Source: Glycera tridactyla (taxonomy: Eukaryota). Taken from it: DNA of 64,000 nucleotides. Below, one piece after another: positions 14,766 through 59,200 of the stretch (the first letter of the stretch is position 1; each line of letters begins with the position of its first letter). The notes beneath the pieces were generated by a model, which ran no database searches, was not told where the DNA came from, and saw nothing but the letters and a program-made list of their open reading frames with translations. Location of the stretch: contig CBFFRO010000022.1 of NCBI GenBank assembly GCA_965644265.1, positions 248,001 through 312,000 of the forward strand, given 5' to 3'. The translations under genes and the position numbers were made by a program.

Positions 14766-14963
14766 AGTCCATATTTGACTGCTTCGATGCACAACGCCGC
14801 CCCTTTCAACCCTTATAGTGTGGGTCACGCGGCCTCGATGAACATGTCTGGAATGATCCAGCAGGTGGATACCGGTTCGACCGTTTCACCTAGTGCGCAG
14901 ATGTCCGTGATGGCTGGATCTGGTGTACAGGCAGCTAAAGTATCCCGTGCTGATCGACTCGAG
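14766..14963 (+). CDS. MBNL: Muscleblind-like exon: linker preceding the ZnF3/4-type pair (SPYLTASMHN...AAKVSRADRLE), phase 0/0
   Basis: Acceptor tgtgttacag| at 14765 and donor GAG|gtagtg at 14964; 198 nt with no stop. Ends RADRLE, like the RTDRLE that precedes ZnF3 in vertebrate MBNL, and joins in frame to VCREFQRG at 23392. Confidence 0.88.
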
Positions 14964-23280: not shown

Positions 23281-23391
23281 CCCGCATCTTCAACGACAGC
23301 GAGTGTCTCGGAGGCGTCATCATGGTCCGGTGCCGGGTCTTACGCTGACTCTATCGCTCCCAGTTCACAATATTCCCAACTATATTTTCAG
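23281..23391 (+). CDS. MBNL: Candidate 111-nt in-frame alternative exon or 5' extension ([37 protein letters not shown])
   Basis: Acceptor attgtttcag| at 23280, 37 open codons in frame with ZnF3, 9 CpG in 111 nt against a CpG-poor background, ending at CAG|GTATGT. Confidence 0.45.
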
Positions 23392-23724
23392 GTATGTCGT
23401 GAATTTCAAAGAGGTACGTGTGCGCGTCAGCCAAGTGACTGTCGCTACGCACACCCCACTGATAATGTAACGGTTGATCTGACTGACAACTCGGTTACCG
23501 TGTGTATGGATCACGTTAAGGGGAAGTGCTCGCGGGATTCTTGCCGCTACTTTCACCCTCCTGCGCACCTTCAGGTGCAGATTAAAGCCGTTCAACAGCG
23601 GGCTAGTGTCTCGAACGCCGCCACCAACGCTGCTGCCGCCGCCGCCGCCGCTGCTGGTGGCCTCACCTGCCCTGCTACTACTACCGTGCTGCCACCTTCT
23701 GCTGCCCCGCCGCACTCCACCCTG
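23392..23724 (+). CDS. MBNL: Muscleblind-like exon with tandem CCCH fingers (ZnF3/4 type) and a 9-Ala tract, phase 0/0
   Basis: [21 protein letters not shown] (CX7CX6CX3H) and [30 protein letters not shown] (CX7CX4CX3H) match the MBNL signature. Acceptor tatattttcag| at 23391. Donor CTG|gtagga at 23725 is the best candidate; the 3' boundary is less certain than the 5'. Confidence 0.95.
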
Positions 23725-34859: not shown

Positions 34860-34931
34860 CCGCAAATGGTAGAGGTCATGACGGCCGCGGGCAAGAAACG
34901 ACCTCGTGACCCTGGCGATGATTTCATTCTG
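34860..34931 (+). CDS. MBNL: 72-nt cassette exon with NLS-like motif (PQMVEVMTAAGKKRPRDPGDDFIL), equivalent to vertebrate MBNL1 exon 5; phase 0/0; absent from the ORF track
   Basis: Acceptor ctaattag| at 34859 and donor CTG|gtacta at 34932; frame-preserving and CpG-rich. KKRPR lies between the ZnF3/4 exon and the KRAA exon, as the KRPL motif does in MBNL1 exon 5. Confidence 0.8.
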
Positions 34932-37759: not shown

Positions 37760-40700
37760 ATTGTGGTGATATCAATAGTAACATGAACAACAATATAAGC
37801 AGCAAATATAACATTGGCAATAATCATATTACAGTTGATAGTGTAACTAGAAATTGATTCCCAAGAAATGGCTTTTACTCAAATTGTGATAGTAGATAGG
37901 TTGTTTTGCTGTGTAGCATTTCCACTTGGTACTGCTACTGCATATTGCATTGAAGCACAGCTGTATAACAAAAAAGATACAACTGGTCAATCCATAACTT
38001 GGAATTCTCATTAAATAAGCATTTGGGTATATACTGGTGGCATGCATCAGGGTTGGCAGTCTTCACTATTTTGTTATATACTTCAGACTCACTATATGTA
38101 AGTCACATTTAGGTTGCAGTGATCTGATATTATATTGTAAGTCATGTCACAAAAATGGATGATCAATTTTAAATAATAGGACACAATTCATCACTCTTAA
38201 TAATGCTCGAAGTGAATATTGCAGCACGAACAATCTTATACAAATTAGTGCTTTCTCGTGATTCTTCTTGTTCATCTCAGGTATCAGATAGAGACAATTT
38301 TGCATAAATTTTGTGATAAGTATTTATGCAGATTTGGGTTGAGGGAATGGGAGGGAGGTGAATGAGTCTTTGAAAATGGTCAGAATGAGCAAGTGTTTCA
38401 CACACTTAGGATCACTAAGCAATCACATGCAGATGTCCAAAAGCCATGCATGAATTACCAAACACTTGTCAGATACACGTCAGCTTTCAGATCAGATCAA
38501 CGTGTCGCAGTTCAGCGTAGATTCGATATAGAGAGGCAGATCTCCCAGCTACTTGGTGTTATTTTCTGATGTCATTGCTATTTGATCTTGTGCTGTCTTC
38601 AGTGTTATCATTTCACCGAATTCTGTTAGGCGTCCAATGCTCAGATTCTTCATCAGAGTGTCACCTATCTGCAACTGCGATGTCATGCAGCTGTTAAGAA
38701 AAATTCATTGGAATTTTCCAGAATTGTTCAAAATGCATTGGTTTTTATGAATTGCACAGTCTATGTTTTCTATGTTCCAATTCATCTCAATGATGAAAGT
38801 AAAAAGTCAACTTAAGTAGACTGTCTCATAAAATTTCAACTGGTGCTCAACATATTGTTAGCAACTGCCATATTATTCTGCTTTGTGCTCTACTGAAAGC
38901 TCAGAATACAGAATAATGTTGTTAGTTTCCCCAAGACGCTGGATGCACAACATGTATGGCATTTGTGAGACTCATACGTTTCTCAAAACAGTGACTACCA
39001 TCTTTGTTGCCCGTTATATGCAACATCTGATGGTTGCATGCTCTATGCAATGTGGGTATTACAACCTCATCTTTCAGCAAATGAACATCAGACTAGAATT
39101 CAACAGATAGGTGTACATTATTGGTGAATTGGTGACAAGCGTGAGGTTGAGGTGCTCAAGATTACTTGAGTTAGCTAATTTATTTGCTTGTTTATCTTTC
39201 ATGAGCTGCATCCCGTCTGGTTCCATTCCAGTTTCAGTATCTGGCTTCACACATTGTCCTTATGCCACACTTATGCCTGTCCAGAAGGCTAAATTTAGCA
39301 GGCACAGGATGTTGGTTTTTGATATTGCTTGGCATGGTCATATGACTACGTCTCTGCCCGAACCTCAATTTATTTGCCTGCCTGCTGTGCAGAGTTGAAG
39401 CATGTATTACAAGGCCTATATCAAGTCAAAGACTGAAGTGTGGCATAACTACAAGATGTCCTATGCATGTGATATGGGTGAGAATGGATGGCACTTTTGG
39501 AGTATGCTATCCCATGGAATGTTGTAGTGGCAAAAGTCTGTCTTATGTGTTTTTCTCATTCATATCCTGTGCGTAGGGCATTATTGTCATGAACTCACCA
39601 GCGTATTGTCAATCATTTCTCACCACCACTGCTCTTCATGCTCCGCTTGGCTTCTGTATCGGCAGGAAGTAAAATTTGCAGCTCAGTGGTTTCAACATGG
39701 TGGCACACACTAGCTTTCTGATTTTTAGTTTTTCTTGACCCTCTCTCCTGCTCCCCCTCTTTTGCCATTGCAAAATCTCAACAGATGATACCCCAGCATG
39801 AACGTGATTTGCCACCACTCGGTGGTGATATCATCAGCTATGAACCCATCTTGTGGTGACCTGTCAAAGCTAGATGCCTCACTTTTATTCTTTTCGAATT
39901 CACCTGGAGGTCAAACACTAATTGGTATGGCTGGACTGCTCTAATCACCTGTGTGCTACTCCGTATTCTTGGTGTCCGTGTGTCTTTATTGAGCTGATGA
40001 TGGCTGAGGCTTGTTTTCTGTTCATATTCGTTGATAACTAATTCAATGTTAATGTTGAAACAGGCACACCGTCCTTACCCAATGCCGGGTGTACCACTCT
40101 ATGTGCCAGGGCCAGGTCAGTAAGCGTATTACCGTAGGAATGGCATTCTTGCAACGGCTTTTAATGTTGCTTTTACTCCGTAAGCAGTTGTGACTCGCTT
40201 GACATGATTATTGTGGCAAAACACTCGCTGCTGCAGGCATATCTTGTTAGTGCCACTTGCTTTTCACTCAATCATTCAGCGGTCCCGATTTGTATATCCG
40301 GTATGGGCTTTGGAACCTGATTGCTAAAAACTCTTGTTTGTGTCAGTGGGGGAGTTTAATTACAGGGCATGGAGAAGTCTCTGAATTGGCTTAGCATCCA
40401 AGATTGAAAATGCATTGACCATAATTGAGCTGTAGATAAGTTCTTTTTTCATCTTAGTCCCTTTTACACTAAACTTGTGTTGATTTCATTAAAATGCTTA
40501 ATTATCTATTTAACAATATATTTATCGACAAAAGTGTCATAAATATAAAATAAACCATGTGTCTTGATGTGGCATGCTGATTGTCCGTTGTATCCGGCAT
40601 ATTTACTATACAGCCCTGTCTGCTAGCCCCCCTCTTCCAGTATTAACCTATAACATGTTAATCTCCTCAGAAGCACATCAAAAAAGCACTTGTGGTGATA

Positions 40701-42599: not shown

Positions 42600-42759
42600 G
42601 GTATGTCAGTACCGGGTATGGTACCTATGGTGAAGCGTGCAGCGGTTGCCGATAACAAGAGTGGAATTCCTATGTATCAGCCCGGCGCTGGTGCCGCGGC
42701 CTACCAACAAGCAGCTCTTGCTGCTATGCATATGCAACAACCATTTGTGCCCGTAACCA
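42600..42759 (+). CDS. MBNL: Muscleblind-like exon-6-like segment (GMSVPGMVPMVKRAAVADNKSGIPMYQPG...QQPFVPVT), phase 0/1
   Basis: Acceptor gcattgcag| at 42599 and donor CCA|gtgagt at 42760. The KR..A...G.P.YQ....YQQ...QQPFVPV pattern is typical of Muscleblind C-terminal regions. Confidence 0.9.
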
Positions 42760-47881: not shown

Positions 47882-48099
47882 CATTTGTTCTCTCTGACTT
47901 CTCTTTCATGCCCTGCCCCATCACTACTCCAACCACAACCTGTTGTTGCTTACCAAAAAACAAAAAACAAAAATCTGCTCACCACACACTGCATGCTGCG
48001 CTACCAACTCACACACGCTTTCCACCAATCGCTGATCTCCTCTCAACCTGCCTTCACCGAACCGACCAATCGCTGGCCGTGTCTCAACCATGCCATCAG
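47882..48099 (+). promoter_or_regulatory. 216-nt AG-exclusion zone with YGCY motifs upstream of the 98-nt exon
   Basis: No AG between 47882 and 48097; 11 YGCY motifs; branch-like CTGAC (47894) and CTGAT (48032) each followed by pyrimidines. Confidence 0.6.
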
Positions 48100-48197
48100 T
48101 GTCATTGCTACCGGGCACACAAGCAGCGCTAGCAACCGGAAGTATGGCGATGGTTACTAACGCCGCTAGCGTCAATTATTTTGACGAATCAAACCAG
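48100..48197 (+). CDS. MBNL: 98-nt exon (M)SLLPGTQAALATGSMAMVTNAASVNYFDESNQ, phase 1/0; needed to put the extra zinc-finger pair in frame
   Basis: First AG after a 216-nt AG-free stretch (catcag| at 48099); donor CAG|gttagc at 48198. Phase 1 matches the 42759 donor (a+tg=ATG) and phase 0 matches the 52495 acceptor. Confidence 0.78.
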
Positions 48198-51100
48198 GTT
48201 AGCTAAGATACCGCAAAGTCATGGCACGGTGCAGGCTTGCTGCCATTGGTGGTTGCTGCTTGCTGATATTATAAGCCGGATATTGTCCTAGCTGCACCCG
48301 CAGCATTTGGGGGTCCTCTATTGGGGCCCTCCATTGGCAGCTGGCTTTGAGTCCTCCCTCACCTTTGTCTAGCCCCTCCTCCTCCTCTCCCTCTCTCACC
48401 CCTCTCTCTGGCTCTATGGCACTTCCCTGTTCACTGATATAGAAATAGTTGCAGAATAGTCTTTAGAGGAGGCATACAATAGTTGTGCTTAGCCGAAAAT
48501 TCACTCTGTATCAATTTGGAGGTCGTAAGTACTTTTTTTGTTTCTCCCAAGTCAAATTGATCCTGCTGCTGAGTTTCATCTATTCTGACATCAAAATCGG
48601 CATAGATACGTTTGCCTTGGATGATGTACATTATCTTCAAACTACTGAGGATTTTCACCATTTAGAGCACAATCATTTCATATATGCCATCCATCAGGAT
48701 TTTGAAGACATGATTTCTCTTATAGGCATAAATTGCCACATTTCAAGCCTGATATTGCAAAAACTAGTATCAATGATTCTGAAAATTGGCATCATAACAA
48801 TCCTTGCTAATCAAGTTTTAGCATCCCTGCTACTTGCATTCACATACGTGCAAAACTTTGGGAGAAATAGTGCTCATCTCCTGATGATTTGGAGAAAGAT
48901 GACGATCGCAATCGTCTATGACTCTTCCAGAGTAATCCAGTTATCACTAATGGATTGTTGATGATAGATGTGTGGGACAATGTAGTGAGATGTTCTCTAT
49001 GACTCCAATGAGACATTAATCAACCAACAAAACAAGACAGACCCCTTAATCATTGTATACAATTAGTTCATATGAGTTTTGGTATTCCATTTGATTCATG
49101 TGGGTGAAAGCTGTAGAAACTCCAAGGTATATGATGATTTATTCTGACTGGTGATATCCTGAACCCAGGGCATTTAATACAATGATGCATAGGTAAATTT
49201 GTAGCGTCCTGTTGCACAATCCCACTCCTGTGTTTCATCAAGAATCAGAACCAGGCCATTTTCATTTGGTGTATTTGTTTTATTTTATCTCTTTCCATCA
49301 TGCGAATGATTCCAGTTGCCAAACCATTCATAGCCCAAACAATCGAAACTGCAATGTCAGTGCAAATATGTCGATTGAGCAAGCATTTTCTTTCTTGCTT
49401 ATTTGTTTTGTTCTGTTTATTCTGATGATGCCCTGGCCAATTGGTGTGTACATGCTTTGTTGTCTCTTCATGCTTATTCCATATCATGCCTCTCAAATAA
49501 TTCAAGCCAGGGTTGAACAGATGTAAAAAGCAATCATTTACTCAAACCTTATCTTGATCTCACCCCGCTGTGGAAGAGTGTTACCAGGGGTTGAGATATC
49601 TCTCATTGTGGAATATCTGGCACACATACAGGCATACATACATACTCAGGCATTGATACCAGTCTAAAAGAGACAGATGAACAATATCAAACATTTATGT
49701 GAAAATATTGTACATTTATCAAATGATGCCTTCAAGATGCAACATTCCATGCAACAAGACTGGAATGAAAACAGGTTTGGCGCTGATTTCTCCGTCCAGT
49801 TCATAGTTTGTGCACCAGGGAATCTTCAAATTCATTACGAATTTGGAGTAATGACTTCTTTCCTTGGCTGAGATTTTGACAGCTCACACATCACAATAAT
49901 CAAGGAAATTTAGATTTTTTAATGTGCTCATTGGTATTACTCCATCAATATAAAGAGGTCAATTTTGCCACTCTTTTCATGAAAATGATAAGCTGTGTAC
50001 ATGTGCAATCCATGGGATGATCACTTGTAGCAGTGGAAGAAGGGATTTGCGATGTAGGGACCTGGATTTGCTGTAGATGTTGGTGAAACAGAATCCCATA
50101 TTCAACCAACTCTTTGATCATTGCAAATACATTGACAATGACAATGACAATATCTTTTATTTTATAATAATACATTGTACTGCCATCAGTACTCAGTTCA
50201 TTACTGATTTTGGAAATCGAGGGTGGCATCTCTGAGTTTATTTTGTATTTTATTGGTATTATTTGAGTTCATTGATCATCAGCTTATGTTGGTAACCTCC
50301 TGCCGCCCCAAACTCTTCATCACCAGTCTCTTCTCATTGAATGTCTCACACATCTCTCAAACTTCAAATCCATAAAGTGTGAACCATGGTTTGATCTTGT
50401 GGGAGACCACAAGTATTCAATATCAGTTCGATGTGACTTTATTTATTCTGAAGCCTCCATGTGACTGTCCCATAACAGGTATGATTGTGTTACCTATCAA
50501 TAGGTTTGAGTTATCTTTGTATTTCAATAGAAATAGTATTTGTATGAGCGATGTAAAGATCGAGAACAGATTATGAAGATCATTGCCCAATAAGATTCAG
50601 GAATAATTTGCCTCCTCATAGACTATTCTCCACCACAATCACATTGCCTCCTGTGCCATAATTGCTCCCTATAGTTCAGCATTCCTCCTATGCAGTTAAC
50701 TACCACAGTTAAAAATCCATTATCAACGAAGAATTTACTGAAATGCTTCATCATAGATTCAAATACACCTTTCAAAGATAGATTTTCATGCTGTTTTTGG
50801 AAAGATAGCAGTTTTTTCTCATCAGATATAGAAGTTGACTGTTTCAACAGCTTATATATAAATGAACATCAGAGCTTTCCCACTTTGGTTGGTCCATTGT
50901 TGATGATTGGGACTGTGTGTATTTTCTGCATGGAGTGTTATTGGTAGTGCTCTCTACTGGCACACGCCGCCGCCGCCATCACTGCAGCAGCAAGCCTCCA
51001 CTGGTGTCCCTGTCGCCATGCCGATGGGAATTTCTTCTCTTCTCTTTTTGCCGTGACCTCATTCTCTGCAGGCTTTGCAGTGGTGTATTTCTTGCAGGGA

Positions 51101-52494
51101 ATGAAGTGACTCCACTACTGAGCACCTCACAACCCTTGGTTGGAGTCCTCTCTGTGTGTGATCCACCCAATGGTGTTGGGATGCTTGCTTCATTTTCAGG
51201 TTCCTGTTTGAACAATGCAAATCTTTTAGTTCAATATCATCCCTTGGTCATCGAAACACACCCATGTATGTACAATCTGATAAAGATAACATCTATAAAT
51301 TTGGGCATTTCTTATTGGCGCCAATAATAGAATTATTTGTTTGGAGTAAACACCAAACAATTGTCCCAAAGTGTCCATTCACATTGAAATTGAGTGTAGT
51401 TTGGAGATTCTTCTCAGTTAGCATTACATAGCAGTGCCTTCTATGTGAAGTGTGCAGATCATGTATCAGATTTGTGTGCTGGTGCTATCAAGAAGCACTT
51501 CCCAGTCTTTTCAAAAGTGTAAAATTAATACCCATGAGCTGGTAACTAGAACGGCTCAGTCAGAATTGCTTTTGGTGAATTACTAGTTGATATTGGGGAA
51601 AATGGAATTTTGCGTATGCATAGATCTGATTTTATCATAATTCACATAAGTTGTGGAGGGCATCATCCTTTTATGAGGGTATTTTAGGTGCTCTGCCTGA
51701 GAGGCTGTGAAACTTTGCTGGAAGTATTTTGAATTCTGGATGAATTTGTAAAAGATTTGCATTGGAGCACGGGTTCCTGAAGTATGTTCTGTGAAATAAC
51801 TACTTTGCCTGATGAAAACTCTGCTTCATAGTTAACATGATTGTCCATAGATTTAAAAACAGACTGAACTCACAAGTTTCCATTTCTCTGCTAGAATCAT
51901 TTCACAGTTTTCTTCTTAGTGAAATAAAATCTGAATTTTGTGCCATACCAAGATGATGGACTTGAGAGACAAATGATCTCCATCTGAATTCATCTTCCTG
52001 GCAACATTTCTGAAATCATACTTTTCAGCATATTATAACCAAAAAGAATATGATTTTTCAGCATGTACATGTAGAATCCAAAACATGAGGTCAAAGGATC
52101 TCATAATGATAATTGTTTCCAGTTTCATAGAACACACTGGTTTACATTCAGCAATATTGCATTCATGTAAGCCATACAGGAAAACTGATACTGAACATCA
52201 TTCAAGAAGTTCTTTTAGTCGGGGAAATTGAAAATTTGATCATGAGTAGTTGGTTGATCTTTCCTAGATGTGCTTTGAAGTATTTCCTAGCAATAACAAA
52301 GTAATTTCTATATACAACTGGAGCTTTTATGCATTAAACTTTCAACACTTGTTCAACTCTGCTCAGATCTGCTTTGCTAGCTGTGTTTTCAATGAATGAG
52401 TGACTAGAGGGTATGTCTTGCTGATGATGTTTCCTTGTGATCGCTCTCCATCTACCGATTCTCCAAACTGATGAAATGTGAATTGTTCTTACAG

Positions 52495-52579
52495 TTGCTG
52501 GACACCCTCCCAGTGTGCAGAGATTTTAAGTCTGGACAGTGCAAGCGGCCACAATGCAAATATGTTCACCTTGTAGAAG
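52495..52579 (+). CDS. MBNL: Exon encoding an additional CCCH finger (LLDTLPVCRDFKSGQCKRPQCKYVHLVE), phase 0/1; absent from the ORF track
   Basis: Acceptor ttgttcttacag| at 52494 and strong donor AAG|gtgagt at 52580; CX7CX4CX3H preceded by the MBNL-type (L)xVC motif. Confidence 0.9.
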
Positions 52580-52734
52580 GTGAGTAAACATGAGATACTT
52601 GTGTATAATCGTGCATACATGCATACAGTAGATATGATTTGTTGTTATTACATCATCTCAATACTCATTGATGTTTTTTTCTCACTCATCAAATCATATT
52701 CATCGATTGTGATTCAGAATTATATCCACATGCA

Positions 52735-52739
52735 CACCC

Positions 52740-52803
<64 letters not shown>
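52735..52803. repeat. (CA)n microsatellite
   Basis: Directly visible. Confidence 0.95.
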
Positions 52804-52804
<1 letters not shown>

Positions 52805-52989
52805 TTTTTTTAGTGATAGAAATCATGTCAGAGACATATTTCCAGATTGTACTGGCAACAGGTCCATGAAATGTGTTCCAAATGCCCAAATTATTTTTTG
52901 GCTTGTATGGGATTTGAACCATCAACCTTCCAGTTTGGCACCCTCGCCAGCAACAAACTGCCAACGCTCTTGTCCTCTGCCCCACGGCA

Positions 52990-53853
52990 NNNNNNNNNNN
53001 NNNNNNNNNNNNNNNNNNNNNNNNNNNNNNNNNNNNNNNNNNNNNNNNNNNNNNNNNNNNNNNNNNNNNNNNNNNNNNNNNNNNNNNNNNNNNNNNNNNN
53101 NNNNNNNNNNNNNNNNNNNNNNNNNNNNNNNNNNNNNNNNNNNNNNNNNNNNNNNNNNNNNNNNNNNNNNNNNNNNNNNNNNNNNNNNNNNNNNNNNNNN
53201 NNNNNNNNNNNNNNNNNNNNNNNNNNNNNNNNNNNNNNNNNNNNNNNNNNNNNNNNNNNNNNNNNNNNNNNNNNNNNNNNNNNNNNNNNNNNNNNNNNNN
53301 NNNNNNNNNNNNNNNNNNNNNNNNNNNNNNNNNNNNNNNNNNNNNNNNNNNNNNNNNNNNNNNNNNNNNNNNNNNNNNNNNNNNNNNNNNNNNNNNNNNN
53401 NNNNNNNNNNNNNNNNNNNNNNNNNNNNNNNNNNNNNNNNNNNNNNNNNNNNNNNNNNNNNNNNNNNNNNNNNNNNNNNNNNNNNNNNNNNNNNNNNNNN
53501 NNNNNNNNNNNNNNNNNNNNNNNNNNNNNNNNNNNNNNNNNNNNNNNNNNNNNNNNNNNNNNNNNNNNNNNNNNNNNNNNNNNNNNNNNNNNNNNNNNNN
53601 NNNNNNNNNNNNNNNNNNNNNNNNNNNNNNNNNNNNNNNNNNNNNNNNNNNNNNNNNNNNNNNNNNNNNNNNNNNNNNNNNNNNNNNNNNNNNNNNNNNN
53701 NNNNNNNNNNNNNNNNNNNNNNNNNNNNNNNNNNNNNNNNNNNNNNNNNNNNNNNNNNNNNNNNNNNNNNNNNNNNNNNNNNNNNNNNNNNNNNNNNNNN
53801 NNNNNNNNNNNNNNNNNNNNNNNNNNNNNNNNNNNNNNNNNNNNNNNNNNNNN
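52990..53853. other. Assembly gap in the intron between the two fingers of the extra pair
   Basis: N characters. Confidence 1.
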
Positions 53854-54018
53854 GGTTTCATACAGGGTTTGAACCCACAACCACAGCCAGCAACACACTG
53901 CCAGCTCTCGTGACTGCTACACAACCAAGTGCCCCTTCCCCACAAACACATCTGGAATTTACTAGGTGTATCAGTGATGAACAGTGCTTCTATTATTGGA
54001 TGTTTTATCTCATTTCAG

Positions 54019-54137
54019 ATTATGTAGAAGTTTTGGACGGCAAAGTAACAGTATGCCGAGATGCGGCAAAAGGGAAATGCTCTCGTGCCATGTGCAAGTA
54101 TTATCATATACCAATACTGCCGCATCTACTTATCTAG
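54019..54137 (+). CDS. MBNL: Terminal coding exon with the second finger of the extra pair ((D)YVEVLDGKVTVCRDAAKGKCSRAMCKYYHIPILPHLLI*)
   Basis: Acceptor ttttatctcatttcag| at 54018; g+at=GAT joins the phase-1 donor at 52579. CX7CX4CX3H preceded by VTVC as in MBNL even-numbered fingers; TAG at 54135-54137. Confidence 0.9.
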
Positions 54138-56257
54138 CCCGTTTCTCATCTTGTTGAATTATATTCCTGCAGGAATCAACTCAGTCCATCATGCGCCATG
54201 AGTTAGGTTGATGGATCGGAATACATTTTGACATAAGCTTTAATATGAACCTGGTTTCAGTCACTTCCTATCATTAGGCGTCATGGATATGTCTTGTTAA
54301 ATGTTGGTGAATTAAGTACAACCGGTGTCATATTCTTCATGAGGAATTGGGCTACATAGTACACACATCCATGATGATGTCCCACGACGCTAGTGACACT
54401 GTCAAGAAGGATGACGACATGTTATCTTCTGTAACAGCGGGAGCAGCACAATCTGCGATATTGGACCAGCACAAAGTGTGATTTCAACTTCCATGTAGAT
54501 TATTGTAGAATGTCAGTACTTCCTGTCTATGTCTGATACTAAATAGTCCAACTATGACCGACCCTGCACCCCACTAGTGTCACTGTCCAATGTTGTTTCC
54601 ACTGTTGCACTGGGGATTGATACAGACAGCTTTCTTCCACAGTCCAGACGGGAATAAGGTGTTGTACCTATCTCCATATATATGTTGTTATCAGTCCCTT
54701 AGGACATTAAAACTACCACCGAGGACAAGAACAGCAATCTTCGAAGTGAAATGTTGTGGGTCAACTTATTAAGGTGTGTGTACATGAGATATATTCCAAA
54801 ACTTCACATAAATTTGTATATGTATTTTTTTAATTTCGTTTTTTGACATCATGTTAGTTTTGAGATTTGATTTATACACTGATTTTATGACATGTTAATT
54901 GAAAAGCAAGCTGGTCGGATTTTATACACAGAAGGACTGCCCAGTAGATGGCACTGTTTCCGGGCCAGAACATTGATCACCGGTAAGCTGAGAAGCACTG
55001 TCTTGTGCAGTCTTTGTCTCTGCGTTTTGGTGCTTATTTGTTTTACATGTTACATATGGTGCAAAAATTCTACAACAGAAATGGTGCCTTGTGTGCTTAA
55101 AAACTGACCGATGCTATTGAAGGATTTGTACTGATTGCAAGTGAAGCAGTTTGTCATAACTGCTCAGTGCAAAAATCACTTCACGGAGATAGCAGGTTGT
55201 AGTGATTTGATGAGATCTTGTTGATGTGTGAAAACAGACTCGTGACCTGAATATCGGACTGCGATTTGGTCAGGTCAGTTGCTTCATCAGGTGCAAGGCA
55301 ACAGCATCGAGTGAGGAGGTGGTCAAAGTGGATCATTTGTATAAACTATCTGCGATCAGATCTTTAGTGTGCCATATTCTATGTACAAGTGCAGATTCTA
55401 TTGAAACCATTTTTGTGTTTTCATGAGGCCTTTTAAAGGTTATATATGTATATTTCCCAGTTTCCGTTGGTTAAGTTTCTTATCCTTGGATTTTGGCATT
55501 AGCAAATATACTTAGACTTAAAGTAATCTTGTGTATTTTAGTGACTGTATATGGGAAACCATTTACCTTAAGGCGTAGATAGCTACATGTAAAATGTTGG
55601 ACATATACATATAAATATATATGAAATATACATATTCAAGCATTTCTCTTCCAAATCATAACCCTTTTCAGAGGGCTGTGAATGTTGTTTTACCTTCTAT
55701 TCAATGGAGGACTTTGTATTGGTCCCCATAGTTTCTCTCATATATTATGCATTGTCAACCTTAGATACCTTTGTGATGGGTGTTTCTATGGTAATTATAT
55801 TCATCATACTAATATGTTAACCTCTTTGTCTCTCCCATACTTTGCTGGTATAGGTTTGAACAAATTCTGTTGTGATATGAAAATAATTCCCATTAGGCAT
55901 AGCCACGTGACCTTCCTCATACACATAATTTTAATATATTTTGCTATAGATTGTTTGCTAGTGCCCATCATATGATATTATCATATCATGATATTATCAT
56001 AGAAAAATACCATCAAGAAAGATTCAAGTCCCCTGATATGGAAGATTGATTTGAGAAAAATCTGTTGTGCCTAATCCAGTACCTTTATTGCTTACCATAA
56101 TCAATATGGCACTATTTGATTGGCACAATGTTAGGATATGAAATTCCATCCGTTATTACTGGGGTATGATTCTTTACACCTATACAACTTACATATGGCT
56201 TTTCATAGCTTGCACTGATTTGAGAATTGGTGTTTGTATATTGGTATGATGAATGTA

Positions 56258-56263
56258 AATAAA
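56258..56263 (+). terminator. Candidate polyadenylation signal AATAAA for the muscleblind transcript, overlapping a Pumilio-type TGTAAATA (56254-56261)
   Basis: First AATAAA I found after the 54137 stop; a variant ATTAAA lies at 54706. Use is unproven. Confidence 0.3.
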
Positions 56264-59200
56264 CGTTATGTGATACATACTGTCCCCAGAAATGAATGAG
56301 AGCATGGACTGTGCATCGCCACTGACTACGAATTTTCAGTCACATCATGTGCACATTCACAGACAGGAGCTTTTTTCTGAACTGCTTTGGGAGGGTTTCC
56401 TCTGCAGATGAAGATATTGCTGATGCGATGTGATGGTGTAAAGTGTGGTGAATTTGTGGTCAGATGCTCTGCGAGCACATCAGGGGGCTAGCTACCTACT
56501 GGTAACACACTAGCATTAGTTTTCTTATCTCTGTCCTCCTCCCTCTAGATAATCAGTGGTCTTATATGAATATACCTGTTGATATGTGTATATGTGTCAC
56601 GTCTACGTATATATACATATCTGATGAAATAGCACAGTGATTCAAATCAGATTTTGTCCTCAATGTCAAAACTTGCATGTATCCATTCAAGTATCTGGTA
56701 TGATTCATGCAGCATGTGTTTTGATGGGTATCATTTCTTATTCCAGTGTCAGTACTGTACGAAGTACATTGTCTAGTGTGTTTTGTTCTTATTTTTTTTT
56801 CCATATTTTTGCATGATGGAATCATGATGGATAGACTGTTTTCTTGATTACAAGAAAGTAAAACCACCAAAGCCATTATCATATGAAAGTCGTGTTCCTA
56901 TAGGTAACATCCTACCAAACCATCTGCATGATACATTGGCATCACTATTTGATTTTACATAAATTTAAGATGAGATAGACATGCCTCTACGATGGCAAGT
57001 GATACATCTCCAGGTGTGTGTTTGTGTGTACATGTTTTTCACACATTGTGCATGCACACACTCATCCACCCACACCAATACACATGTCTCGCGTATATAC
57101 AACTCAATAACTCACAGACACACACATACATACATGTTTTGACATGACACTCAGTTGGATAACTGTGCTATTCTTAACAGTAGTGTTTGGACAATACCTT
57201 GGGGTGCTTATAAGTGATAGACAATTCTGTGATTCTATTTTCTAAGTGTTCATAGCTCGATTGAGAAACAAAGATAAAAAGTATCTGTCAGCACCTGTGG
57301 TGTTTGTTTAGAGTCCAGAGCTGTTGAGTGACCACGTTCGACAATCCCAAATCATCAGTTGGTCATTTTTGACGTCTGTGGCCAACTTGCACCATTAGGT
57401 GCCAAAACCATTTGTTGTCATTTCATATATTTCTCACTGTAAACTATGTAAACGGTTATACATATTATACATGTCATTGTAATTGTGTGCTAATCATGTT
57501 ACGAATGTTGTCTGTGGCATTTAATCATCTGGCCCCCACCCTTGACTCCCCAAATGTGAGTTCATGGTCTCTCATCTCAGTAATAGTCACATCCCTTCCA
57601 TGCTTGGAGATTTGCTTCCCTAAGTAGAATCACATCAACTCATCATTGGCATCAATGAATTGGAAAGTTAGGAAAGTATTCCAATCCTTGCAATTATTTC
57701 CGTTTGGCTTGCGATGCAACTGTTCCCCATTCAGCTCGGTTCAGAATTTCCATCATTAACACTCATTTTTCAGAATGAATCACTACTCGATTCAGAATTT
57801 GTACATGTAAGATACAAAACCAAAACTGAGTGAGTATAGAAGGGTGTGAAAATTATTGATTAATAACTATTATTGTAAAACTGTCCTTATATAAAACTGT
57901 TGTCTAGTGTTCTCTAGATCTGTATCATCACAACGAAATGTTCATATTAAGTCTGGGGAGAGGTATCACCCGTGATAGATGTGAATTTTTTCCGGGGGTA
58001 TCTAATGTGCCGAGTGTCTACTGAGAGTTTCATTGAAAAACCCTCAGAGGACAGCAAAGATGTCAAGCAGTGTTAACCCAAAAGTGCCAGGTATATGCCC
58101 ATGATTATTTAAGAAAAAATCTTTGGCAGAGATGTTGAAAATTACCAGCTGTTTATTTTAGTTGTAAAGTCTGAGTTGTAGTATTGTATGTTTTGGATCT
58201 TGTCTTGAAATAGTTATACACCTCTGTTAGATTTAACTAGTGAGTTAGCATGTGGGTTAGCTACTACTATTACTACTACAGAAGGGAATTGACAGTTGGG
58301 GAGAAGATGATGTAATCTTAAGTGCCATTTTACAGAGGCAACATGCTGATTGAGCGTGGCCCCCTGTGTGCCATCAATGATGTATTGAGAATTGGACCAT
58401 GTACAATTTAGGCAAAATGAGACAGAACATCATGACAGCATTGATGATGAGTGCACAAGTTTCACGCAGAGTAGTTCTAATCTAGGGGGCATGTTCATTT
58501 GTCATGTTAGCATTGAGAGGAAGCATTCTGGGCCAACTGAGTAGACAGTACCCCTTTATTGAAACTATGTGATGGATTTATTAGACATATCATGAATGTA
58601 TTTCCCTCATATGAACCTCAAAAATGCATCCTCATCTTGGAGGTTCCTGTGAAAGGTTAGCCATTTTGCACACATCAATATCTATACTTCATTATGGTCA
58701 AATGGACACAGAATCAAGAAAAAACTCCTGGGAGAATCTTTCAGGTTTTATTTGTTGATCATAATACTTGACTCAAATCTTCACAAGAGTTGTTTCTTCA
58801 GCACGAAGATTGCTGCATTTCCCTGAACTTCTTGCCTGATTTTGTGTCAGTGATTTCTTCTCATTTCTATGCATATGAAACAGGCCTAGTTGCCTTTCAG
58901 ACCAATCCTTGAGTTACCTACAAATACTGAAGTGCAACTGGTGTGTGCTTGCATTTGCATATGAATCCGAGAGGAAACCATTGCATTTGACCCTTCTGTG
59001 TACATCACCCAATATCCCCATGTTCGTAGATATCTCCATGTTTATTCATGCACCGTAGACGATAGAAATTTTTAGACATTTTACAAATTTTCAAAGAAAA
59101 TCAAGTTGTAAGAAAAGACAAATTGAGCAACCTGTCCAGATTTCCACAGGCAAGTTTCTCCTAGTTAACTGTCTGATACATACCCAGCAAAGGCAACTAT

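What the first reader, a model, noticed from the sequence alone, without database searches (positions are those of the whole stretch)
52495..54137. Extra C-terminal tandem CCCH pair with atypical spacing, implying up to six fingers
Vertebrate MBNL has two pairs, each CX7CX6CX3H plus CX7CX4CX3H. Here the ZnF3/4-type pair is followed by another pair in which both fingers are CX7CX4CX3H, split by a phase-1 intron. ZnF1/2 are inferred to lie upstream of the window, so a six-finger isoform is predicted, possibly with different RNA specificity.
Basis: partly seen in the sequence, partly recalled or inferred. Interest (0 to 1): 0.7.

Follow-up and report, generated by a model that had tools for sequence, protein, structure and literature searches.

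The report
Ancient third zinc-finger pair of muscleblind
The two short exons really do encode a third pair of RNA-binding zinc fingers in this animal's muscleblind gene, but the pair is an old, widely shared part of the gene from corals to sea squirts that vertebrates lack, and here most transcripts read the first exon in another frame and stop before the fingers.

Summary
Exon A (52495-52579) and exon B (54019-54137) each encode one MBNL-type CX7CX4CX3H finger, and both score above the Pfam cut-off. The assembly gap lies inside the intron between them. RNA contigs from three studies splice 52579 to 54019 (GT..AG), so the gap does not affect the reading frame.

The pair is not a peculiarity of this genome. 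It is the orthologue of a third tandem pair (ZnF5/6) annotated in muscleblind proteins of corals, molluscs, ticks, flies, a sea urchin, an acorn worm and sea squirts. All of these have 7-4/7-4 spacing. The ZnF5 exon is 85 nt in the coral, the oyster and this window, and the phase-1 intron sits at the same place.

Entry in the finger frame needs a 98-nt frame-switch exon (48100-48197). The assembled RNA here instead joins the 42.6 kb exon directly to exon A. That gives the short tail ending AGHPPSVQRF and a stop, which leaves ZnF5/6 in the 3' UTR. A six-finger mRNA is therefore likely from conservation but is not shown for this animal, and ZnF1/2 are outside the window.

I tested both and reuse them. 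The scan holds no such note on other DNA.

Verdict: real; a new member of a known kind.

The parts
14766..14963 (+). Linker exon ending ..RADRLE, 198 nt, phase 0 to 0. Context: it is the exon before ZnF3/4.
   Evidence: Splice sites read. Collinear tblastn match to the Pinctada, Patella and tick proteins.
23392..23724 (+). ZnF3/4 exon (CX7CX6CX3H plus CX7CX4CX3H), 333 nt, ending in phase 0.
   Evidence: Finger profiles: Z3 62.7 bits and Z4 76.0 bits are the best scores. It groups with the TZF2 units in the tree.
34875..34931 (+). 57-nt KKRPRD (NLS-type) cassette exon. Context only; its boundaries are inferred.
   Evidence: Sequence. Weak tblastn matches to P0018 and P0078. This exon is the subject of another finding.
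40064..40115 (+). 52-nt alternative exon (phase 0 to 1) spliced directly to exon A in RNA contigs.
   Evidence: The loose end before 52492 in X2 and X5 maps uniquely to 40091-40112. Splice sites read.
42600..42759 (+). MblC-type exon (..KSGIPMYQPG..QQPFVPVT), 160 nt, ending in phase 1. It is the main partner of exon A in RNA.
   Evidence: Sequence and tblastn. The loose end before 52495 in X2, X5 and X7 equals 42730-42759.
48100..48197 (+). 98-nt frame-switch cassette exon (phase 1 to 0, ending ..VNYFDESNQ). Its inclusion puts exon A in the zinc-finger frame.
   Evidence: Only one frame is open. It matches the exon before ZnF5 in Pinctada. The equivalent exons in Pinctada, Stylophora and Ciona are 107, 50 and 155 nt, all 2 mod 3. 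RNA support here is weak (X7 record 19).
52495..52579 (+). Exon A, 85 nt. In frame 0 it encodes ZnF5 (CX7CX4CX3H at 52516-52569). With phase-1 entry it encodes the tail ..AGHPPSVQRF and a stop.
   Evidence: The Z5 profile scores 71.7 bits against 40.0 for the next best. The orthologous exon is also 85 nt in Pinctada and Stylophora.
52527..52529 (+). TAA stop of the four-finger (MblC-type) frame, 50 nt before the last exon junction.
   Evidence: Read. Frame worked out. The tail is identical to that of Patella P0186/P0089.
52580..54018 (+). Phase-1 intron between ZnF5 and ZnF6. It contains a (CA)n run at 52735-52823, the assembly gap 52990-53853, and copies of a high-copy repeat on both sides of the gap.
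   Evidence: A GT..AG joint skipping 1439 nt is seen in four runs. Alignment of the gap flanks.
54019..54137 (+). Exon B: the linker (D)YVEVLDGKVTV, ZnF6 (CX7CX4CX3H at 54054-54107), a short tail, and the TAG stop at 54135-54137.
   Evidence: The Z6 profile scores 72.1 bits against 48.9 for the next best. Relatives found.
54138..56280 (+). 3' untranslated region after exon B. AATAAA is at 56258. The real 3' end is uncertain because RNA contigs run further.
   Evidence: Runs hold 0.82 of the words of 53854-56400. Contigs of 4.9 and 14 kb contain exons A and B. Poly(A) signal scan.

Best explanation
Exons A and B are the last two exons of this animal's muscleblind gene. They encode its third tandem CCCH pair (ZnF5/6), the orthologue of a module that predates the split between cnidarians and bilaterians. 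The pair is translated only when the upstream reading phase is shifted. The 42.6 kb MblC-type exon ends in phase 1. Spliced straight to exon A, it yields the short tail ending AGHPPSVQRF and a stop, giving a four-finger protein with ZnF5/6 lying in the 3' UTR. If the 98-nt cassette (48100-48197) is included, the phase returns to 0, exon A is read as ZnF5 and exon B as ZnF6. That adds a third RNA-binding pair, for up to six fingers.

Shown: the fingers, their orthology, the A-B splice, and the phase-1 entry in the main transcripts. Inferred: that the 98-nt exon is used in this animal, that ZnF1/2 lie upstream, that the third pair binds GC steps as the other pairs do, and that YGCY clusters before the 98-nt exon let muscleblind control its own switch.
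For: Finger identity: Pfam PF22628 above its cut-off for both exons. The best solved relatives are MBNL1/2 pairs.

Orthology: a search with exon B returns 663 proteins, led by six-finger muscleblind proteins whose best match is their C-terminal finger. These come from Stylophora, Pinctada, Rhipicephalus, Glandiceps, Ciona, Styela, Eurosta and Biomphalaria, and all have ZnF5 and ZnF6 at 7-4 spacing. Profiles of the individual fingers place exon A with Z5 (71.7 bits, next 40.0) and exon B with Z6 (72.1 bits, next 48.9). The third pair forms its own branch, coral included, with support 99/98.

Gene structure: the window's exons are collinear with the Pinctada six-finger protein. The ZnF5 exon is 85 nt and goes from phase 0 to phase 1 in the window, Pinctada and Stylophora. 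The intron lies at the same linker position in all of them, and in Ciona too. The exon before it is always 2 mod 3.

Fold: an AlphaFold model of an orthologue that is 86% identical to its nearest aligned relatives has pLDDT 86.4. It matches only MBNL pairs, with TM 0.72-0.76 and rmsd 1.7-2.0 A.

RNA: the 52579|54019 joint is seen in four runs from three studies, and upstream exons ending at 42759 and 40115 are joined to 52495.

Selection: all eight zinc ligands are kept, together with Arg after the second Cys and the aromatic residue before His. The latter corresponds to MBNL1 Phe202/Tyr236, which intercalate at the GC step (PMC9780971). The 98-nt exon keeps the peptide motif N-x-x-x-V-x-Y-F/Y..Q, which is shared with mollusc, fly and acorn-worm proteins.

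Possible control: there are 11 YGCY in the 200 nt before the 98-nt exon, in the top 0.6% of 200-nt windows here.
Against: No assembled contig in the four runs joins 48197 to 52495. The only hint is one low-depth contig (depth 4.1 against 79.6) that stops one letter past the donor at 48197, while other low-depth contigs read through that donor unspliced.

ZnF1/2 were not found in the window.

Some annotated relatives combine the third pair with only one other pair: D. simulans P0035 and Ciona P0167.

Most orthologue proteins are computer gene models. The fold and the residue conservation were tested on orthologues and single exons, not on the joined product of this window.
Confidence: 0.75

Rival explanations
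1. In this animal exons A and B serve only as the 11-residue MblC-type tail plus 3' UTR. The ZnF5/6 reading frame is an inherited relic that is no longer translated.
For: All long RNA contigs enter exon A from 42759 or 40115 in phase 1, which puts the stop at 52527-52529. No contig shows the 48197|52495 joint.
Against: An untranslated frame would not keep all eight zinc ligands, 93% identity to tick ZnF5, and profile scores of about 72 bits. Only the first 33 nt of exon A are constrained by the other frame. The 98-nt exon keeps an open frame and a conserved peptide motif that has meaning only if it is read into ZnF5. Contigs also drop rare isoforms (tool notes).
Confidence: 0.12
2. The third pair is translated, but never together with both other pairs. 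The isoforms carry four fingers in a different combination (TZF1+TZF3 or TZF2+TZF3), so no six-finger protein exists here.
For: Such combinations are annotated in D. simulans P0035, Lepidoptera P0041, sea urchin P0021 and the cDNA-derived Ciona protein P0167. Tick models splice the ZnF3/4 exon straight to ZnF5. In the window that exon also ends in phase 0.
Against: Six-finger models exist in two molluscs, the relatives closest to this window by ZnF3/4 similarity (Pinctada, Biomphalaria), and in six other lineages. In the window the ZnF3/4 exon appears constitutive in the path to the 42.6 kb exon.
Confidence: 0.1
3. Exons A and B belong to a separate downstream paralogue with its own start, not to the gene that holds ZnF3/4.
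For: The exons lie 29 kb from the ZnF3/4 exon. Another muscleblind note exists on a different piece of this genome.
Against: Exon A begins at an acceptor and has no start codon of its own. RNA contigs join it to the 42.6 kb and 40.1 kb exons. The exon order is collinear with single genes in Pinctada, Stylophora and Ciona.
Confidence: 0.03

Closest known systems
Third tandem pair (ZnF5/6) of annotated six-finger muscleblind isoforms, for example Pinctada imbricata KAK3104468.1, Biomphalaria glabrata XP_055868931.1, Glandiceps talaboti XP_077987304.1, Ciona intestinalis XP_009862110.1 and Stylophora pistillata XP_022791213.1
   Same: The 7-4/7-4 spacing and the position at the 3' end of the gene are the same. 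The ZnF5 exon is 85 nt and the phase-1 intron sits in the same place in the linker. A frame-shifting exon lies just upstream. Identity reaches 93% in ZnF5 (tick) and 70% in ZnF6 (Pinctada).
   Different: For this animal the in-frame mRNA is not yet shown. The C-terminal tail after ZnF6 (..IPILPHLLI) is short, and is shared only with an unnamed ENA protein (P0031).
Drosophila Muscleblind isoform F (transcript RF), described as having a poorly conserved second tandem zinc-finger motif (Irion 2012, PMC3315501, citing Fernandez-Costa and Artero 2010/2011)
   Same: It is very probably the same module. Fly proteins P0035 (D. simulans) and P0008 (Eurosta) carry a 7-4/7-4 pair that classifies with ZnF5/6. 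That pair is 38% identical to a vertebrate-like ZnF3/4, close to the 32% reported for MblF.
   Different: I could not read the MblF sequence or the original papers, so the equation is an inference. The published fly isoform has four fingers (TZF1 plus this pair), not six.
Vertebrate MBNL1 tandem pairs ZnF1/2 and ZnF3/4 (PDB 3D2N, 3D2Q, 3D2S, 5U6H)
   Same: The tandem-pair fold is the same, with TM 0.72-0.76 on an orthologue model. The Arg after the second Cys and the aromatic residue before His are conserved. The linker is about 15 residues and includes the GKVTVC strand.
   Different: The first finger has 4 rather than 6 residues between the second and third Cys. The intron lies in the linker (phase 1), whereas ZnF1/2 is split inside ZnF2 (phase 0) and ZnF3/4 sits in one exon. 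ZnF6 has Ala where ZnF4 has Tyr224. Vertebrates have no third pair, a point that rests on established knowledge and was not tested here.
Drosophila MblC-type C-terminus, called the 'most ancient isoform' (Vicente-Crespo 2008, PMC2238819)
   Same: The main transcript here is of this type. It has a 42.6 kb exon with the KR..KSGIP.YQPG..QQPFVPV motif, followed by a tail ending GHPPSVQRF.
   Different: Here, and in Pinctada and a fly, that tail is encoded in the second frame of the ZnF5 exon. I did not find this stated in the papers I read.

Membership tests
Muscleblind/MBNL tandem CCCH zinc-finger pair | Two fingers of the form C-x7-C-x4-6-C-x3-H | tested here: met
   52516-52569 and 54054-54107 are both 7-4-3.
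Muscleblind/MBNL tandem CCCH zinc-finger pair | A match to the curated finger profile used for MBNL fingers (Pfam PF22628) above its cut-off | tested here: met
   29.3 and 42.7 bits against a cut-off of 27. The window's ZnF3/4 exon scores 94.2 bits.
Muscleblind/MBNL tandem CCCH zinc-finger pair | The closest solved relatives are MBNL pairs, not other CCCH proteins | tested here: met
   MBNL1/2 chains score E 2e-10 and 4e-09. The next family, CPSF30, scores E 0.006-0.4.
Muscleblind/MBNL tandem CCCH zinc-finger pair | Two fingers held in the fixed MBNL pair fold by a linker of about 14-16 residues | tested here: met
   The linker across the splice is 15 residues. The fold was tested on orthologue P0031:77-143, not on the joined window product: pLDDT 86.4, and the top ten structural matches are all MBNL pairs with TM 0.65-0.76.
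Muscleblind/MBNL tandem CCCH zinc-finger pair | RNA-contact residues: an aromatic residue two after the third Cys (MBNL1 Phe202/Tyr236) and an Arg two after the second Cys | tested here: met
   The window has CKYVH and CKYYH, and CKRPQC and CSRAMC. R18 and R51 (Arg) and Y57 (the aromatic before His in the second finger) are nearly invariant across 45 orthologues. The role of Phe202/Tyr236 is taken from PMC9780971.
Muscleblind/MBNL tandem CCCH zinc-finger pair | Binds YGCY/GC-step RNA | not testable with these tools
   This needs a binding assay on the isolated pair.
Third pair (ZnF5/6) of non-vertebrate muscleblind genes | Both fingers have 7-4 spacing and classify with ZnF5 and ZnF6 rather than ZnF1-4 | tested here: met
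   Profile scores are 71.7 (Z5) and 72.1 (Z6), against 40.0 and 48.9 for the next best. Spacing across the relatives is given.
Third pair (ZnF5/6) of non-vertebrate muscleblind genes | Encoded by the last exons of the gene, with the ZnF5 exon going from phase 0 to 1 and an intron in the linker before D/N-x-VE-V | tested here: met
   The exon is 85 nt in the window, Pinctada and Stylophora and 142 nt in Ciona. The intron place and phase are the same in all four.
Third pair (ZnF5/6) of non-vertebrate muscleblind genes | Preceded by an exon that shifts phase 1 to phase 0 (length 2 mod 3) | tested here: met
   The lengths are 98 nt here and 107, 50 and 155 nt in the three orthologue loci.
Third pair (ZnF5/6) of non-vertebrate muscleblind genes | An mRNA that reads the pair in frame exists in this animal | tested here: inconclusive
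   The A-B splice is shown. Entry into exon A is seen only in phase 1, from 42759 and 40115. There is a single low-depth hint at the 48197 donor.
Six-finger muscleblind isoform | ZnF1/2 are encoded by the same gene and joined to ZnF3/4 and ZnF5/6 | not testable with these tools
   No ZnF1/2 exon is present in the window. Orthologues have all three pairs.

The most novel reading that the evidence does not exclude
The third pair and its frame-switch exon form an ancestral animal-wide switch between four-finger and six-finger muscleblind. Muscleblind itself controls the switch through YGCY clusters. Vertebrates have lost it. The module has never been described as such, and the third pair has its own RNA preference, so that invertebrate muscleblind has a mode of target selection that the vertebrate-centred literature has missed.
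Probability: 0.3. Interest if true: 0.6.

Novelty: new member of a known kind. Interest (0 to 1): 0.42.

Why it matters
Muscleblind/MBNL proteins are central splicing regulators and the proteins sequestered in myotonic dystrophy. The literature describes one tandem finger pair in invertebrates, or two, and two in vertebrates (Irion 2012, PMC3315501; the 2026 review PMC13044900 mentions no third pair). This window, with its orthologues, shows that a third pair is part of the ancestral gene. Its exon size and intron phase have been kept since before corals and bilaterians split, and it is reached through a frame-shifting cassette exon. For this genome the result is an annotation: the last two exons, two alternative C-termini and a dual-frame exon. 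For the field it points to a cheap experiment, measuring what a third pair adds to RNA binding and to splicing maps. The Ciona protein used by Oddo et al. 2016 (PMC5041496, 'Zinc-finger X1') may already have been a six-finger form.

Tried and rejected
1. A separate downstream gene was rejected, because RNA contigs join exon A to upstream exons.

2. A recent duplication of ZnF1/2 or ZnF3/4 was rejected. The intron positions differ: ZnF1/2 is split inside ZnF2 in phase 0 and ZnF3/4 is unsplit. The third pair also forms its own deep branch.

3. Disruption of the coding sequence by the gap was rejected, because the gap is intronic and is spliced out.

4. Literature searches for 'six zinc fingers', 'third TZF', 'ZnF5/ZnF6' and 'MblF' together with muscleblind gave nothing beyond Irion 2012. 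The Fernandez-Costa 2010 paper is not held. The Oddo 2016 supplements held as text do not state the finger number of the Ciona protein.

5. The Glandiceps locus could not be fetched.

6. The promoter/terminator scan is a bacterial-type tool and told nothing here.

7. The word-index protein search was not used. Its length filter makes single exons useless as queries, and the protein was not left open.

8. Each exon was searched by reference, and orthologue proteins stood in for the joined product. The gap was neither filled nor looked up.

Full report
**What is in the sequence.** The window carries most of an animal muscleblind (MBNL) gene on the + strand. A six-frame scan for C-x7-C-x4-6-C-x3-H finds four fingers:
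- two in one exon at 23395-23556, with spacing 7-6 then 7-4;
- one at 52516-52569, spacing 7-4;
- one at 54054-54107, spacing 7-4.

Exon A is 52495-52579 (85 nt; acceptor tacag|, donor gaag|gtgagt). Exon B is 54019-54137 (acceptor tttcag|, stop TAG at 54135-54137). Fifteen residues separate the His of the first finger from the Cys of the second, as in MBNL pairs. Both exon translations hit Pfam PF22628 above its cut-off, at 29.3 and 42.7 bits against 27. Their best solved relatives are MBNL1/2 finger pairs, E 4e-09 and 2e-10, and the next family (CPSF30) is far behind.

**The assembly gap.** The gap 52990-53853 lies inside the intron, 410 nt after the donor of exon A and 165 nt before the acceptor of exon B. 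Both flanks of the gap are copies of one repeat, which is very abundant in RNA contigs (bins 52699-53098). That probably explains why the assembly broke there. RNA contigs of all four runs laid (X1, X2, X5, X7; three studies) skip 52580-54018 with GT..AG ends at depths of 30-80. Continuity and frame across the gap are therefore set by splicing, and the gap has no bearing on the coding sequence. I did not fill it or look it up.

**What the pair is.** A full HMMER search with exon B alone found 663 proteins at E <= 0.001. The list is led by proteins in which six fingers match and the best match is the C-terminal one. Their names are muscleblind-like isoforms or unnamed models from:
- a coral (Stylophora, Pocillopora);
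- molluscs (Pinctada, Biomphalaria);
- a tick (Rhipicephalus);
- a fly (Eurosta);
- an acorn worm (Glandiceps);
- sea squirts (Ciona, Styela).

Proteins with the first pair plus this pair come from a sea urchin, a shrimp, a barnacle, Lepidoptera, Drosophila simulans and Trichinella. In every one of these the last two fingers have 7-4 spacing, so the spacing is the norm for this pair and not atypical.

I built profiles for each of the six fingers from eight six-finger proteins. Exon A scores 71.7 bits with the ZnF5 profile (next best 40.0) and exon B scores 72.1 bits with ZnF6 (next best 48.9). The window's 23.4 kb exon classifies as ZnF3 and ZnF4. In a tree of whole pairs the third pair is one side of a branch with 99/98 support, and the coral sits at its base.

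**Gene structure.** tblastn of the orthologues maps the window's exons in the same order as in the six-finger Pinctada protein:

| Exon | Coordinates |
|---|---|
| Linker exon | 14766-14963 |
| ZnF3/4 | 23392-23724 |
| KKRPRD cassette | about 34875-34931 |
| MblC-type exon | 42600-42759 |
| 98-nt exon | 48100-48197 |
| Exon A | 52495-52579 |
| Exon B | 54019-54137 |

I fetched the Pinctada, Stylophora and Ciona loci and reconstructed their exact exon junctions. The ZnF5 exon is 85 nt in the mollusc, in the coral and in this window; in Ciona it is 142 nt. It always enters in phase 0 and leaves in phase 1. The intron always lies just before the D/N-x-VE-V of the linker. The exon before it always converts phase 1 to phase 0, at 98, 107, 50 and 155 nt, all 2 mod 3. 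By contrast ZnF1/2 is split inside ZnF2 in phase 0, and ZnF3/4 sits in one exon, as Irion 2012 also states (PMC3315501). The third pair is therefore an old, independent module of the gene and not a recent copy of either other pair.

**How it is reached.** The 42.6 kb exon ends in phase 1. Spliced straight to exon A, it gives ..PFVPVT-I-AGHPPSVQRF and a TAA stop at 52527-52529. This tail is identical to the last ten residues of four-finger Patella isoforms and close to those of another lophotrochozoan-like protein and of a fly. It is the MblC-type C-terminus, called the most ancient isoform by Vicente-Crespo 2008 (PMC2238819).

The 98-nt exon has only one open frame, enters in phase 1 and leaves in phase 0. 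With it included, exon A is read as ..VNYFDESNQ-LLDTLPVCRDF.., that is, as ZnF5. The end of that exon carries a motif (N-x-x-x-V-x-Y-F/Y-..-Q) that is shared with the Pinctada, Biomphalaria, Eurosta and Glandiceps proteins.

Two earlier notes of this scan on the same window proposed the dual-frame exon and the 98-nt switch. I tested both and they hold at the level of sequence and comparison.

**What the RNA shows in this animal.** The long contigs that hold exons A and B (4.9 kb in X1 and X2, 1.9 kb in X5, 14 kb in X7) continue upstream of 52495 with letters that match 42730-42759 exactly. A second form continues with 40091-40115, the end of a 52-nt exon that also ends in phase 1.

Exons A and B are thus certainly joined to the upstream muscleblind exons. 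However, in the assembled, dominant transcripts exon A is read in the tail frame. The protein stops 50 nt before the last exon junction, and ZnF5/6 lie in the 3' UTR. No contig joins 48197 to 52495.

The only hint of use of the 98-nt exon is a 318-nt contig in X7, at depth 4.1 against 79.6, that ends one letter past its donor. Low-depth contigs in X1 and X2 read through that donor unspliced. Contigs drop rare isoforms, so this is absence of evidence only.

**Why I still think the pair is translated.** Only the first 33 nt of exon A are constrained by the tail frame. The remaining 52 nt and all of exon B keep every zinc ligand, are 93% (tick ZnF5) and 70% (Pinctada ZnF6) identical to orthologues, and keep the residues that are nearly invariant across 45 orthologues. 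An untranslated 3' UTR would not do this across hundreds of millions of years. Nor would the 98-nt exon keep an open frame and a conserved peptide.

**How it probably works.** An AlphaFold model of the third pair of a close orthologue (P0031:77-143, with 45 aligned orthologues) has pLDDT 86.4. Its ten best structural matches are all MBNL1/2 pairs, with TM 0.65-0.76; the best have rmsd 1.7-2.0 A over 59-64 columns. The aromatic residue before His (MBNL1 Phe202/Tyr236, which intercalate at the GC step; PMC9780971) and the Arg after the second Cys are present in both window fingers.

The simplest reading is a third GC-step binding unit, which raises valency for clustered YGCY sites. Two differences might tune preference: the shorter loop in ZnF5, and Ala at the ZnF4 Tyr224 position in ZnF6. 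This is untested.

The 200 nt before the 98-nt exon hold 11 YGCY, in the top 0.6% of windows here. That would fit repression of the exon by muscleblind itself, but this is inference only and is the subject of another finding.

**Comparison with what is known.** Six-finger isoforms are present in public annotation for many phyla. In the literature I could search, the only trace is the Drosophila isoform F with a 'considerably lower' conserved second pair (Irion 2012). Fly proteins in my hits carry the third-pair type in that architecture, and it is 38% identical to a vertebrate-like ZnF3/4, so MblF is very probably this module. I could not read its sequence.

Oddo et al. 2016 used Ciona 'Zinc-finger X1'. 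The current X1 and X2 records have six fingers, but the paper's text does not give the number. Searches for six fingers or a third pair in muscleblind found nothing else.

I therefore file this as a new member of a known kind. The module is known to databases and only faintly to the literature, and the window adds one more orthologue.

**Limits.** ZnF1/2 are not in the window. Most orthologues are gene models. The fold and the tree used orthologues, because joined exons of this window were not to be searched. RNA evidence comes from contigs, not reads. The organism is not known to me; by ZnF3/4 similarity it is closest to molluscs.

Noticed in passing
window 40064-40115: A 52-nt exon (phase 0 to 1, encoding ..HRPYPMPGVPLYVPGP) is spliced directly to exon A in RNA contigs of two runs, skipping the 42.6 kb exon. 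It is an alternative route to the same AGHPPSVQRF tail.
   Followed up: partly
window 52495-52529; L001 42242-42326; proteins P0180 and P0183: The MblC-type tail (..GHPPxVxRF) is encoded in the second frame of the ZnF5 exon in this window, in Pinctada and in a fly (Eurosta), but not in the coral or in Ciona. The dual-frame use therefore looks protostome-wide.
   Followed up: partly
window 52527-52579: The stop codon of the main (four-finger) frame lies 50 nt before the last exon-exon junction, right at the usual limit for nonsense-mediated decay.
   Followed up: no
window 52850-52989 and 53854-53960: Both flanks of the assembly gap are copies of one repeat that is extremely abundant in RNA contigs (depth 1,700-6,800). 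It is probably a SINE-like element and the reason for the gap.
   Followed up: partly
window 47900-48099: There are eleven YGCY motifs in the 200 nt before the 98-nt frame-switch exon. Only 0.6% of 200-nt windows of this window reach that count.
   Followed up: partly
window 54138 to beyond 58800: RNA contigs holding exons A and B extend 4.8 kb (X1, X2) and 13.6 kb (X7) past exon B, so there is either a very long 3' UTR or run-on transcription. The first AATAAA is at 56258.
   Followed up: no
protein P0006 (Closterium sp. NIES-68, GJP29920.1): A protein with six MBNL-like fingers is labelled as coming from a green alga. This is either contamination of that assembly or an unexpected relative.
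   Followed up: no
L003 19667-19720 and 20214 onwards (Ciona): Ciona has an extra phase-1 intron inside ZnF6, absent from the coral, the mollusc and this window.
   Followed up: no
window 23281-23391: An open frame continues upstream of the ZnF3/4 exon from a second acceptor at 23281, and the Biomphalaria protein P0018 aligns across it. This may be an alternative 5' extension that replaces the RADRLE box. It is the subject of another note.
   Followed up: no
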